Source of the DNA: Camelus dromedarius
Taxonomy: Eukaryota
Assembly: GCF_036321535.1 (NCBI RefSeq)
Contig: NC_087460.1
Coordinates: forward strand, 5,022,001 to 5,086,000
DNA length: 64,000 bases
Reading direction: 5' to 3'
Shown: positions 20,463 through 23,400 of the stretch, piece after piece
How the letters are laid out: each line of letters opens with the position of its first letter
Position numbering within the stretch: the first letter of the stretch is position 1
The notes under the pieces: generated by a model
Told to the model about the DNA's origin: nothing
What the model saw: only the letters and a program-made list of their open reading frames with translations
The model's database searches: none
Program-made: the position numbers and the translations under genes

Positions 20463-23400
20463 ATGAAGACAAGACAGAATAAAGACTCAGTAAGTAGTAG
20501 CTAAAGTGAGAGACATGACAGATCAGGGGCAGGGAAACCTCTGGCCTGTCTCAGGGCCCCGCCCACCCCCCACCCACTACTTCTACGCTTTCCTCCCTCC
20601 CCTCCATTGCCAGACAGCACCCCCTGACAGCCAGAGCCTGGCTTTGAACCCCATCCTTCTGTGACACCCACCAGAGAGGAAGACTAGAAACAAAGGCACG
20701 TGATAAGGTGAGGTACAGTGTAGAAATCTACATTATCTGCTTGCTTCCTTCTCCTGCAGATGTCAATGAGGAGTGGCCGGAAGAAGGAGGCCCCTGGGCC
20801 CCGGGAAGAGCTGAGATCGAGGGGCCGGGCCTCCCCTGGAGGGGTCAGCACATCTAGCAGCGATGGCAAAGCCGAGAAGTCTAGGCAGACGGCCAAGGTA
20901 TTCTGTCCCCAGGTCCTCCCACAGGCTGCCCGAGCACAGGGGCTGAGGATGTGTTGGGGGGAACTTCCTGTCTGGCAGAGGGTACTGGTGGACCTTGGGA
21001 GGTTTAGGACAGGAATTTTCTTTCTCTCTAACAGAAAGCCCGAGTAGAGGAAGCCTCCACCCCAAAGGTCAGCAAGCAGGGCCGGAGTGAGGAGATCTCC
21101 GAGAGTGAAAGTGAGGAGACCAATGCACCGAAAAAGACCAAAACTGAGGTGGGGGACCCTGGCAGCCATCCTGACCCATTTTCTGACCATTCTTTCACCG
21201 AAACTTCCTTTCACTCACAATTCCTATTTTAATCTTGCCTGGAGTATGAGAGCAGAGTCATATCCTAATGCTTATTAAAGTAGCCTGTCTACAATATGTC
21301 AGATCTTTAGGGCTTTGGCCAGACCATCAGATGACTAGGCAGGGCCAAAAGGGGACTGCAAGAGTATGGGGGATTCTAGCCTCTCCTTTTCCAGGTCCTG
21401 ATTTCCATACAGTGGCTGGGGAGGAGATGCAGGGTGAGAAGTCTTAGTGGAAGGAACAAATAAGTCATAAGGAGCATGCAGAAATGGTCTTTCTAGGAAA
21501 CAAGGGTTTCTGGGATGTTTAGTTACAGGGGTAGAGGAGATGAGAGGAGGGCAGACGAGCTGGTGGAAGACAGGGATTTGGGTTCAGCTGTGGACAGGGA
21601 GAAGGTGCTAGAGATGGACACTGGAGGAAGGAACAGGGTTTTACAAGGAGGGAACCCAGACCGCTACTGGGGAGCAGCAGATACTGTGGGGAGAGTGGGG
21701 GAGTCCCCAGATGCAAGGAGGTGGACTTGAGCATGGTTATTCATCACTTCGTGGCACAGTGGTGTGCTGTGAGCGGGGTTGTGCTGCAAGGGAGGCCCCA
21801 AATCCCAGGGAAGCAAGGAAGGAACAGAAAAGGGGAAAACGGTCCTCCCTTTTCTACAGCAGGAGCTCCCTCGGCCACAGTCTCCCTCGGATCTGGATAG
21901 TTTGGATGGGCGGAGCCTCAATGATGATGGCAGCAGTGACCCTAGGGATATCNNNNNNNNNNNNNNNNNNNNNNNNNNNNNNNNNNNNNNNNNNNNNNNN
22001 NNNNNNNNNNNNNNNNNNNNNNNNNNNNNNNNNNNNNNNNNNNNNNNNNNNNNNNNNNNNNNNNNNNNNNNNNNNNNNNNNNNNNNNNNNNNACCAGACA
22101 GCACCCCCAGACAGCCAGAGCCTGGCTTTGAGCCCCATCCTTCGGTGACATCCACTGGATATCATGCTCCCATGGAGCCCCACACATCTCGAATGTTCCA
22201 GGCTCCTCCGGGAGCCCCTCCCCCTCATCCACAGCTCTATCCTGGGGGCACTGGTGGAGGAGTTTTGTCTGGACCCTCAATGGGCCCTAAGGGGGGAGGA
22301 GCTGCCTCTTCAGTGGGGGGCCCTAGTGGGGGTAAGCAGCACCCCCCACCCACCACCCCCATTTCAATATCAAGCTCGGGGGCTGGTGGTGCTCCCCCAG
22401 CAAAGCCACCTAACACTCCAGTCGGTGGAAACCTACCCTCTGCTCCACCACCAGCCACTTTCCCCCATGTGACACCAAACCTGCCTCCCCCACCTGCCCT
22501 GAGACCCCTCAACAATGCATCAGCCTCTCCTCCTGGCCTGGGGGCCCAGCCACTACCCGGGCATCTGCCCTCTCCCCATGCCATGGGGCAGGGGATGGGT
22601 GGACTTCCTCCTGGCCCAGAGAAGGGCCCCACTCTTGCTCCGTCACCCCATCCTCTGCCACCTGCTTCCTCCTCTTCTGCCCCAGCCCCCCCGATGCGGT
22701 ATCCTTATTCATCCTCTAGTAGTAGCACTGCAGCAGCCTCCTCTTCCAGTTCTTCCTCTTCCTCCCAGTACCCGGCTTCCCAGGCATTGCCCAGTTATCC
22801 CCACTCCTTCCCTCCCCCAACCAGCCTCTCGGTCTCTAACCAACCCCCCAAGTATACTCAGCCTTCTCTCCCATCCCAAGCTGTGTGGAGCCAGGGTCCC
22901 CCCCCACCTCCTCCCTATGGCCGCCTCTTAGCCAACAGTAGTGCCCATCCAGGCCCCTTCCCTCCTTCCGCTGGGGGCCAATCCACTGCTCACCCACCAG
23001 CCCCAGCACATCACCATCACCACCAGCAACAGCAGCAGCAGCAGCAGCAGCAGCAGCAACAGCAACAGCAGCAGCAACAACAACATCATGGGAGCTCTGG
23101 ACCCCCTCCACCTGGAGCGTATCCTCATCCCCTGGAGAGCAGTAGCTCCCACCATGCACATCCTTATGCCATGTCTCCCTCCCTGGGGTCTCTGAGGCCC
23201 TACCCACCAGGGCCAGCACACCTGCCCCCACCTCACAGCCAGGTGTCCTTTAGCCAAGCAGGGCCCAACGGCCCCCCAGCCTCCTCCTCTTCCAATTCCT
23301 CTTCCTCCTCTCAAGGGTCCTACCCATGTTCACACCCCTCTCCTTCCCAGGGCCCCCAAGGGGCGCCCTACCCATTCCCACCCGTGCCTCCGGTCACCAC

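What the first reader, a model, noticed from the sequence alone, without database searches (positions are those of the whole stretch)
20540..20672. Decayed copy of ATN1 exon 5 sequence inserted in ATN1 intron 2
Seen: 20610-20671 matches exon 5 at 22094-22155 at 58 of 62 nt, same orientation, 1.5 kb apart. The upstream about 70 nt reads SGLSQGPA then F-P-P-S-P-like codons, the part hidden in the exon-5 gap. The copy occupies about half of a 270-nt intron, is frameshifted, and has TGA where the exon has AGA. I recall human having CGA there and GAACCCCATCCTTCTGTGACACCCAC, which the intronic copy matches better than this species' exon, implying an old duplication that kept ancestral bases. Flanking CTCAG| (20554) and AAG|GTGAGG (20707) would define a 153-nt stop-containing exon, but the flanking introns would be only 65 and 52 nt. 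I know of no description of this element.
Basis: partly seen in the sequence, partly recalled or inferred. Interest (0 to 1): 0.7.

Follow-up and report, generated by a model that had tools for sequence, protein, structure and literature searches.

The report
Old exon-5 fragment inside ATN1 intron
A 132-base piece of ATN1 exon 5 was copied into the gene's short second intron in the common ancestor of this animal, whales and cattle-like ruminants, and it now looks like a slowly decaying repair scar rather than a working exon.

Summary
Window 20610-20671 matches exon 5 at 22094-22155 at 58/62, same strand (BLAST E 2e-22). The whole segment 20540-20671 aligns end to end with exon 5 of three other mammals.

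It is not an assembly artefact. The intron is held at all 24 sampled words by at least 14 DNA runs of three related organisms, from five studies.

It is not mammal-wide. The same copy sits at the same place in fin whale, wild yak and an unnamed bovid-like contig (intron 2 is 251-274 nt). A bat, two unnamed eutherians and the Tasmanian devil have an empty site (141-155 nt). The empty sites keep about 13 nt that the carriers lack.

The junctions show no target-site duplication and no poly(A). They show a roughly 13-nt microdeletion and a (C)TGGA microhomology, the signature of a templated patch at a repaired break.

The four differences are explained. Three are derived in this animal's exon. At the fourth site both changed: ancestral CGA became TGA in the copy and AGA in the exon.

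The copy decays at least as fast as neighbouring intron, and its splice-like sites are not kept in ruminants, so it is probably a neutral relic. One 26-nt invariant block remains unexplained.

The parts
20490..20759 (+).
   Evidence: GT at 20490 follows the codons MKTRQNKDS. The intron ends in CAG at 20757-20759, before ATGTCAATGAGG. The orthologous intron aligns in seven other loci. It is 251-274 nt in carriers and 141-155 nt in non-carriers.
20540..20671 (+). Inserted copy of an internal segment of ATN1 exon 5, 132 nt, frameshifted and stop-containing
   Evidence: It aligns end to end with exon 5 of L005, L003, L002 and L008. It is absent from the bat, L005, L004 and the devil, and present in whale, yak and L007 at the same place.
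20610..20671 (+). Right half of the copy, the part that can be compared with this genome's own exon 5 (22094-22155): 58/62 identical
   Evidence: E 1.8e-22.
20625..20627 (+). TGA in the copy at the codon that is AGA in this genome's exon and CGA in exon 5 of the other species examined
   Evidence: The yak copy also has TGA while L007 keeps CGA, so CpG decay happened more than once.
20634..20659 (+). 26-nt block of the copy that is identical in all four carriers; unexplained local conservation
   Evidence: It is the longest invariant purely intronic run in about 1,136 intronic columns (the next is 17 nt). P is about 0.008 by column shuffling, with the window length chosen after the fact.
20536..20541 (+). 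Left junction of the insertion. About 13 nt of ancestral intron, still present in non-carriers, are missing here.
   Evidence: Empty sites read ...GGGAAnn + TAGGGGnnnGGGC + CTGGAGAG.... The whale junction shares CT with the exon, a possible 1-2 nt microhomology.
20671..20675 (+). Right junction: remnant of a (C)TGGA microhomology shared by the end of the copied exon segment and the target intron. It has mutated to CCAGA in this genome.
   Evidence: Whale, yak and L007 keep CACTGGAG. Exon 5 reads CACTGGATA. The empty sites of L005 and the bat read GCCTGGAGAG.
20708..20713 (+). Donor-like GTGAGG that pre-dates the insertion. The fin whale gene model uses it to splice the copy onto the next exon.
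   Evidence: GT is present at this place in carriers and non-carriers alike. P0002 begins inside the copy and joins ...AHDK to MSMRSG.
20760..20898 (+). Next coding exon of ATN1 ([10 protein letters not shown]...SRQTAK)
   Evidence: It differs from the whale at 3.6% and from L005 at 5.0% of sites.
21860..23868 (+). It includes the masked run 21953-22092 and a 20-codon CAG/CAA tract at 23024-23083.
   Evidence: Pfam PF03154 (Atrophin-1) is listed for the matching proteins.
22094..22155 (+). Visible part of the parental segment in exon 5
   Evidence: It carries three lineage-specific changes relative to the copies and to the other species' exons.

Best explanation
This is the scar of a single ancient DNA-repair event.

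The event. In the stem lineage of the clade holding this animal, whales and ruminants, a break in the short ATN1 intron downstream of the ATG exon was repaired by copying about 132-139 nt from the middle of exon 5. Today that source lies about 1.5 kb downstream on the same strand. About 13 nt of the original intron were lost at the break. The patch was sealed through short microhomologies: 1-2 nt on the left and (C)TGGA on the right. The template was either the nearby DNA or an ATN1 transcript; the data cannot tell which.

The consequence. The insert nearly doubled the intron, from about 145 to about 270 nt. It has since decayed like ordinary intron, in this genome by a frameshift, about a dozen substitutions and a CpG-to-TpG stop. 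Meanwhile exon 5 went on evolving under protein constraint. That is why the copy preserves three bases that this genome's exon has since changed. As a whole it most likely has no function.

Basis of each step:
- Shown: presence or absence across species, the junction anatomy, the direction of the changes, and the decay rate.
- Inferred: the repair pathway, the nature of the template, and the lack of function.
For: Real sequence. The intron 20495-20759 is held at 1.00 of its 24 sampled words in at least 14 DNA runs of organisms A, B and C, from studies P2, P16, P17, P18 and P19.

One event, shared by descent. The same copy with the same boundaries lies in the orthologous intron of Balaenoptera physalus, Bos mutus and L007.

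Empty site. Myotis lucifugus, L005 and L004 and Sarcophilus harrisii have introns of 141-155 nt. They keep about 13 nt that the carriers lack.

Junctions. There is no target-site duplication and no A tail. There is a microdeletion and a (C)TGGA microhomology. These are the features that define class 2 templated sequence insertions (PMC5110952).

Timing. Bases that all copies share but that differ from non-cetartiodactyl exons are also in the yak's exon 5. The source was therefore an exon of that stem lineage, and no post-insertion change is shared by the copies.

Neutral decay. Window-to-whale divergence is 0.205 in the copy, against 0.161, 0.116 and 0.142 in the neighbouring intron sequence.

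No conserved exon. The AG at 20554 and the AG at 20612 are lost in yak and L007.

No RNA family and no unusual fold.
Against: - A 26-nt block (20634-20659) is invariant in all four carriers, more than random placement of changes predicts (P about 0.008). Part of the insert may therefore be constrained.
- RNA runs X10 and X11 hold 0.92 of the intron's words, so the intron is present in RNA libraries.
- The carrier clade has only 67% bootstrap support. The place of the unnamed empty-site species L005 is not resolved by 1.3 kb of sequence.
- Pigs, hippos and other orders were not sampled.
Confidence: 0.8

Rival explanations
1. Assembly artefact: exon-5 reads were wrongly placed in the intron, or the assembly is chimaeric.
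For: Exon 5 has an N run next to the parental segment in this window, and the fin whale scaffold also has an N run over its parental segment.
Against: - Every sampled 31-mer of the intron is present in at least 14 independent DNA runs of three organisms.
- Every 31-mer of the right half is specific to the copy, because the four differences are less than 31 nt apart.
- The same structure is found in three other assemblies or contigs of other species.
- The whale locus has 16 N runs, so its gap is not telling.
Confidence: 0.01
2. The insert, or part of it, has been co-opted. It could act as a poison exon or alternative 3' splice site that lowers productive ATN1 mRNA, or as a small intronic regulatory element centred on the invariant block 20634-20659.
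For: - The 26-nt run is invariant in four carriers.
- The copy brought a long pyrimidine tract followed by CAG (20577-20612) upstream of a pre-existing strong donor-like AAG|GTGAGG.
- The intron is present in RNA-run contigs.
- A whale gene model used the copy as an exon.
Against: - Both acceptor-like AGs are lost in yak and L007, where 17 nt including the CAG are deleted.
- The flanking introns would be 52-65 nt, at or below the usual working minimum for mammalian introns (established knowledge).
- The copy as a whole diverges faster than neighbouring intron.
- The window length for the conservation test was chosen after seeing the data.
- The whale model is a poor prediction on a gapped scaffold, not transcript evidence.
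Confidence: 0.08
3. This is the same insertion event, but the patch was reverse-transcribed from an ATN1 transcript (an RNA-templated class 2 insertion). It was not copied from the neighbouring DNA by template switching.
For: - The copied segment is purely exonic.
- Experimental templated insertions at breaks were reported to derive from RNA (PMC5110952).
- ATN1 is broadly expressed (established knowledge).
Against: - The segment lies inside one large exon and crosses no splice junction, so nothing marks it as RNA-derived.
- The template is in cis, on the same strand and about 1.5 kb away, which is what local template switching (synthesis-dependent MMEJ, PMC2943611; MMBIR, PMC8421209) also predicts.
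Confidence: 0.3
4. The element is ancestral to placental mammals and was lost independently in bats, L005 and L004.
For: Only four non-carrier lineages were seen, two of them unnamed.
Against: - The empty sites of the bat, L005 and L004 share about 13 homologous bases exactly where the carriers have the insert. A deletion cannot recreate these.
- The marsupial also lacks the insert.
- The copies carry exon states specific to the yak-type (cetartiodactyl) exon.
Confidence: 0.02

Closest known systems
Class 2 templated sequence insertions (TSI/TSIP; Onozawa and Aplan, PMC5110952)
   Same: A short stretch copied from elsewhere in the genome fills a break. The donor stays intact. There is no target-site duplication and no poly(A). 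There is a microdeletion and microhomology at the junctions (against the definition read).
   Different: - Those were described as human polymorphisms and experimental events, with donors mostly on other chromosomes.
- They were argued to be RNA-derived.
- Here the donor is 1.5 kb away in the same gene, the event is fixed and tens of millions of years old, and an RNA origin cannot be shown.
Microhomology-mediated template switching during repair or replication (synthesis-dependent MMEJ, PMC2943611; MMBIR templated insertions, PMC8421209)
   Same: A nearby template in cis, direct orientation, microhomology at the switch points, and loss of a few bases at the break.
   Different: Typical polymerase-theta insertions are 5-30 nt, and this one is about 132-139 nt. 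No second switch or complex rearrangement is visible. The pathway is inferred from the scar alone.
Retrocopy or processed pseudogene fragment made by LINE-1 (class 1 insertions)
   Same: Exonic sequence of an expressed gene is found at a new place.
   Different: It has no target-site duplication, no A tail, no polyadenylation signal, no spliced exon junction and no TTTT/A target. The defining features were tested and not met.
BRCA1 exon-22 fragment copy in intron 23 of this same genome
   Same: An exon fragment was duplicated into a nearby intron of its own gene. It is old, shared among several orders, and drifts like intron.
   Different: It is a different gene with a wider reported distribution (bats, carnivores, horses, whales, ruminants, camelids). 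That note is an unchecked AI report, which I did not test.

Membership tests
Class 2 templated sequence insertion (break repair patch) | Inserted sequence is a copy of another genomic place that remains intact | tested here: met
   Exon 5 remains an open reading frame of 592 codons after the mask. The copy aligns to it at 58/62 and to the other species' exon 5 over all 132 nt.
Class 2 templated sequence insertion (break repair patch) | No target-site duplication, no poly(A) tract, no polyadenylation signal at the 3' end of the insert | tested here: met
   Junctions were compared with four empty sites. No duplicated flank is present, and the insert ends ...GACACCCAC followed directly by intron sequence.
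Class 2 templated sequence insertion (break repair patch) | End-joining marks: microdeletion at the target and microhomology or untemplated bases at the junctions | tested here: met
   About 13 nt (TAGGGGnnnGGGC in the bat, L005 and L004) are missing in carriers. (C)TGGA is shared by the exon end, the target and the whale, yak and L007 junctions. One or two nt (CT) are shared at the left junction.
Class 2 templated sequence insertion (break repair patch) | Template is RNA (as argued for the experimental events) | not testable with these tools
   The segment lies inside one exon and crosses no exon junction, so nothing in the sequence tells RNA from DNA.
LINE-1-mediated retrocopy (class 1 insertion) | Target-site duplication of 5 nt or more, A tail, TTTT/A target | tested here: not met
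   None of the three is present.
Cassette or poison exon | Splice acceptor and donor kept across the species that carry it, with spliced transcripts | tested here: not met
   The AG at 20554 and the AG at 20612 are lost in yak and L007, and only the pre-existing donor-like GT is kept.
Atrophin-1 gene (ATN1), as the host locus | Encodes a protein matching Pfam PF03154 Atrophin-1 with the N-terminal [19 protein letters not shown] exons and the His-Gln tract | tested here: met
   The translation of 22094-23869 matches proteins carrying PF03154 that their sources name atrophin-1. The exons were read, and the 20-codon Gln tract. The P_C10 gene lies downstream in the orthologous loci.

The most novel reading that the evidence does not exclude
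The 26-nt core of the insert (20634-20659), unchanged in this genome, whale, yak and a second bovid while the rest of the insert decays, has been co-opted in cetartiodactyls. It could be a small intronic element, such as a binding site for a splicing or transcription factor that sets ATN1 output, born from a piece of the gene's own coding sequence.
Probability: 0.07. Interest if true: 0.55.

Novelty: new member of a known kind. Interest (0 to 1): 0.3.

Why it matters
The finding is mostly tidy rather than surprising. It is a well-resolved natural example of a templated break-repair patch that became fixed, with both junctions, the empty site and the donor all readable after tens of millions of years.

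It has three practical uses:
- It is a clean rare genomic change that unites this animal with whales and ruminants, to the exclusion of bats. It could be scored in pigs and hippos as a marker for the base of that clade.
- It is an annotation trap. The fin whale gene model starts inside the copy, and short-read assemblies may break at the duplicated segment.
- It acts as a fossil of exon 5. It shows that three changes in this genome's exon, one of them Pro to Ser, arose after the split from whales and ruminants.

It says nothing about the CAG-repeat disease biology of ATN1.

Tried and rejected
- **Masked N runs.** They were left as they are. I did not read across 21953-22092 and make no statement on its letters. 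The left half of the copy was compared only with exon 5 of other, non-human species.
- **Protein searches for full-length mammalian ATN1.** They returned almost none. Only aberrant or partial models and read-through ORFs on contigs appeared, and these turned out to be the useful handles (P0002, P0004, P0149-P0151, P0162, P0166).
- **Metagenome scan with a degenerate 23-mer from the intron's 3' end.** It gave one unrelated AT-rich contig, a chance match.
- **Paper searches.** Searches for the run and sample accessions of the unnamed contigs and for any description of the element found nothing.
- **Identity of L005/L010.** It could not be fixed. The end of L010 resembles a carnivore SINE from my memory of its consensus, which is a lead only. 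AU tests cannot place L005 inside or outside the carrier clade.
- **Gene conversion from exon 5.** I considered it as the cause of the well-kept right half and rejected it. The copies lack the lineage-specific exon changes of this genome and of the yak.
- **The whale N run over the parental segment.** I considered it a sign of repeat-induced misassembly and dropped the idea, because that locus has 16 N runs.
- **Rfam and folding of the intron.** No family was found, and the fold z-score was -0.44.
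Full report
**1. The observation**

The window carries ATN1 on the + strand.
- The ATG exon ends at 20489 (MKTRQNKDS).
- A 270-nt intron runs from 20490 to 20759.
- The next exon ([10 protein letters not shown]...) is 20760-20898.
- The large exon with the His-Gln tract is 21860-23868.

The repeat finder, a local alignment and blastn against the whole window all give one direct repeat. Window 20610-20671 matches 22094-22155 at 58 of 62 bases, ungapped, with E 1.8e-22. 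There is no further copy in the 64 kb.

The exon side of the repeat starts one base after a masked N run (21953-22092). I left that run untouched. Upstream of 20610 the intron reads SGLSQGPA in one frame. After a frameshift it reads [12 protein letters not shown], a TGA stop, then [15 protein letters not shown] in another frame.

The whole stretch 20540-20671 aligns end to end with exon 5 of four other loci:
- an unnamed eutherian, L005;
- a metagenome host contig, L003;
- the Tasmanian devil, L002;
- the wild yak, L008.

**2. It is real**

The 521 bases around the intron are held at 0.96 of the sampled 31-mers by DNA runs of three related organisms. The intron alone (20495-20759) is held at 1.00 of 24 words by at least 14 DNA runs from five studies.

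The four differences in the right half lie less than 31 nt apart. Every 31-mer there is therefore specific to the intronic copy and cannot come from exon 5. A misassembly is excluded.

RNA runs X10 and X11 hold 0.92 of the intron's words, and X17 holds 0.58. So the intron occurs in RNA libraries. Contig word shares cannot tell retention or pre-mRNA from DNA carry-over.

**3. Who has it**

Canonical mammalian ATN1 proteins were not returned by the protein searches. Aberrant models and read-through ORFs gave the handles to other loci instead.

Carriers:
- Fin whale. Its model P0002 (Balaenoptera physalus) begins inside an intronic exon-5 copy. Its locus L001 shows the same copy at the same place in a 274-nt intron.
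- Wild yak, Bos mutus (P0162, L008), with a 251-nt intron.
- A metagenome host contig 2.2% diverged from the yak (L007), with a 253-nt intron.

Non-carriers:

| Locus | Species | Intron length |
|---|---|---|
| L009 | Myotis lucifugus | 145 nt |
| L005 | unnamed eutherian | 155 nt |
| L004 | unnamed eutherian | 141 nt |
| L002 | Sarcophilus harrisii | 145 nt |

A maximum-likelihood tree of the surrounding 1.3 kb, with the insert removed, gives ((window,(whale,(yak,L007)100)96)67,(L005,Myotis)45)63, with L004 and the devil outside. The carriers therefore form the expected clade, but with modest support. An AU test cannot fix the position of L005.

Earlier notes of this scan call this genome a camel. 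I did not verify that. It fits three near-identical organisms in the run tables and the window branching outside whale plus ruminants. If it is right, the carriers span the crown of Cetartiodactyla.

**4. How it arose**

The empty sites of the bat, L005 and L004 read ...GGGGCAGGGAAnn, then about 13 bases (TAGGGGnnnGGGC), then CTGGAGAG....

In the carriers those 13 bases are gone and the exon segment sits in their place. At the right edge, whale, yak and L007 read CACTGGAG. The exon reads CACTGGATA and the target reads GCCTGGAGAG. So (C)TGGA is common to donor and target. This genome has since mutated it to CCAGA. At the left edge the whale shares CT with the exon.

There is no target-site duplication, no A tail and no polyadenylation signal. 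These are the marks of a break repaired with a templated patch. They fit class 2 templated sequence insertions as defined in PMC5110952. They also fit microhomology-mediated template switching (PMC2943611 and PMC8421209, listed). They are not the marks of LINE-1 retroposition.

The donor is in cis, on the same strand, now about 1.5 kb downstream. The copied piece lies inside one exon, so a DNA template and an ATN1 transcript cannot be told apart.

**5. When**

Two positions at which all copies differ from the L005 and L003 exons (a Leu codon ending in G, and a T in the proline-rich stretch), plus a third where they also agree with the devil's exon (an A), are also found in the yak's own exon 5.

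The copy was therefore taken from an exon that already had the changes of this clade's stem. No substitution is left that the copies share against their source. By contrast, about 11 substitutions plus indels are private to this genome's copy, and up to 13 are private to the whale's.

The insertion thus happened on the stem of the carrier clade, shortly before its first split. If the clade is Cetartiodactyla, general knowledge of mammal dating puts this at very roughly 60-80 million years ago. That figure is an inference, not a computation made here.

**6. The four differences**

At three of them (A/G, T/G, C/T) this genome's copy agrees with the whale copy and with exon 5 of yak, L005 and L003. 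The exon of this genome is therefore the derived one. Two of these changes are synonymous and one turns Pro into Ser.

At the fourth site the ancestral base is the C of CGA. The copy has TGA by CpG decay, and the exon has AGA. The yak copy also has TGA while L007 keeps CGA, so that decay occurred more than once.

I established it here without using human sequence.

**7. Does it do anything?**

Between this genome and the whale, the divergences are as follows:

| Region | Divergence |
|---|---|
| The copy | 0.205 |
| Rest of the intron | 0.161 |
| Next intron | 0.116 |
| Following intron | 0.142 |
| Exons | 0.02-0.05 |

As a whole the copy is not constrained.

The acceptor-like AG at 20554, and a better-looking one at 20612 behind a long pyrimidine tract, are both lost in yak and L007, where 17 nt are deleted. 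The donor-like GT at 20708 is also present in non-carriers, so it pre-dates the insert. A conserved cassette or poison exon is therefore unlikely.

Rfam finds nothing, and the intron folds no better than shuffles.

One thing remains unexplained. A 26-nt run (20634-20659) is identical in all four carriers. It is the longest invariant purely intronic run among about 1,136 intronic columns (the next is 17 nt). P is about 0.008 by shuffling columns, with the caveat that the run was noticed first and tested afterwards. Gene conversion from exon 5 does not explain it, because this genome's exon and the yak's exon each carry a private change inside the run that the copies lack.

**8. Verdict**

The element is a fixed, clade-specific templated insertion of exon-5 sequence into the second intron of ATN1, and very probably a neutral repair scar.

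It is a new example of a known kind of mutation. I found no description of it.

Its value is as a clean rare genomic change, as a warning for gene annotation (the whale model starts in it), and as a small fossil of the exon. The chance that its invariant core has acquired a function is low but not nil.

Noticed in passing
L001 5001-5148 (Balaenoptera physalus, GCA_008795845.1): The deposited fin whale gene model (P0002, 585 aa, 'hypothetical protein E2I00_015139, partial') starts inside the intronic exon-5 copy. It reads the copy in a shifted frame and splices from the donor-like AAA|GTGAGG onto the next exon. The model is also broken by many N runs, 16 in the 16-kb locus.
   Followed up: yes
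window 23024-23083: The ATN1 glutamine tract is 20 codons of CAG with five CAA interruptions, preceded by five His codons. It is a long but interrupted tract at the place where pure CAG expansion causes DRPLA in people.
   Followed up: partly
window 22132, 22144, 22151 (exon 5): This genome's exon 5 carries three changes that are absent from the intronic copies and from exon 5 of yak, L005 and L003. Two are synonymous (GAA to GAG, TCT to TCG) and one replaces Pro with Ser (VTPT to VTST).
   Followed up: yes
L010 1-30 (Logan DRR836106 contig, same species group as L005): The contig ends in about 30 nt that, from my memory of the consensus, look like the reverse complement of a carnivore tRNA-Lys-derived SINE (about 26/30). 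This suggests that the unnamed empty-site species is a carnivore. It is a lead only.
   Followed up: partly
window 15407-15546, 21953-22092, 26200-26339, 27665-27797, 35431-35562, 51527-51666: There are six N runs of 132-140 nt. They were left unfilled and were not read across.
   Followed up: no
L008 4915-5033 and L007 775-893: The two bovid copies share a 17-nt deletion and a 1-nt deletion relative to the camel-like and whale copies. The insert has therefore decayed by different indels in each lineage.
   Followed up: yes
L004 569-709 (Logan ERR14842589, unnamed eutherian): In this species the 141-nt intron is in frame and free of stops. A contig ORF (P0150) therefore reads straight from MKTRQNKDS through the intron into the next exon. 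The intron is also unusually G+C-rich.
   Followed up: partly
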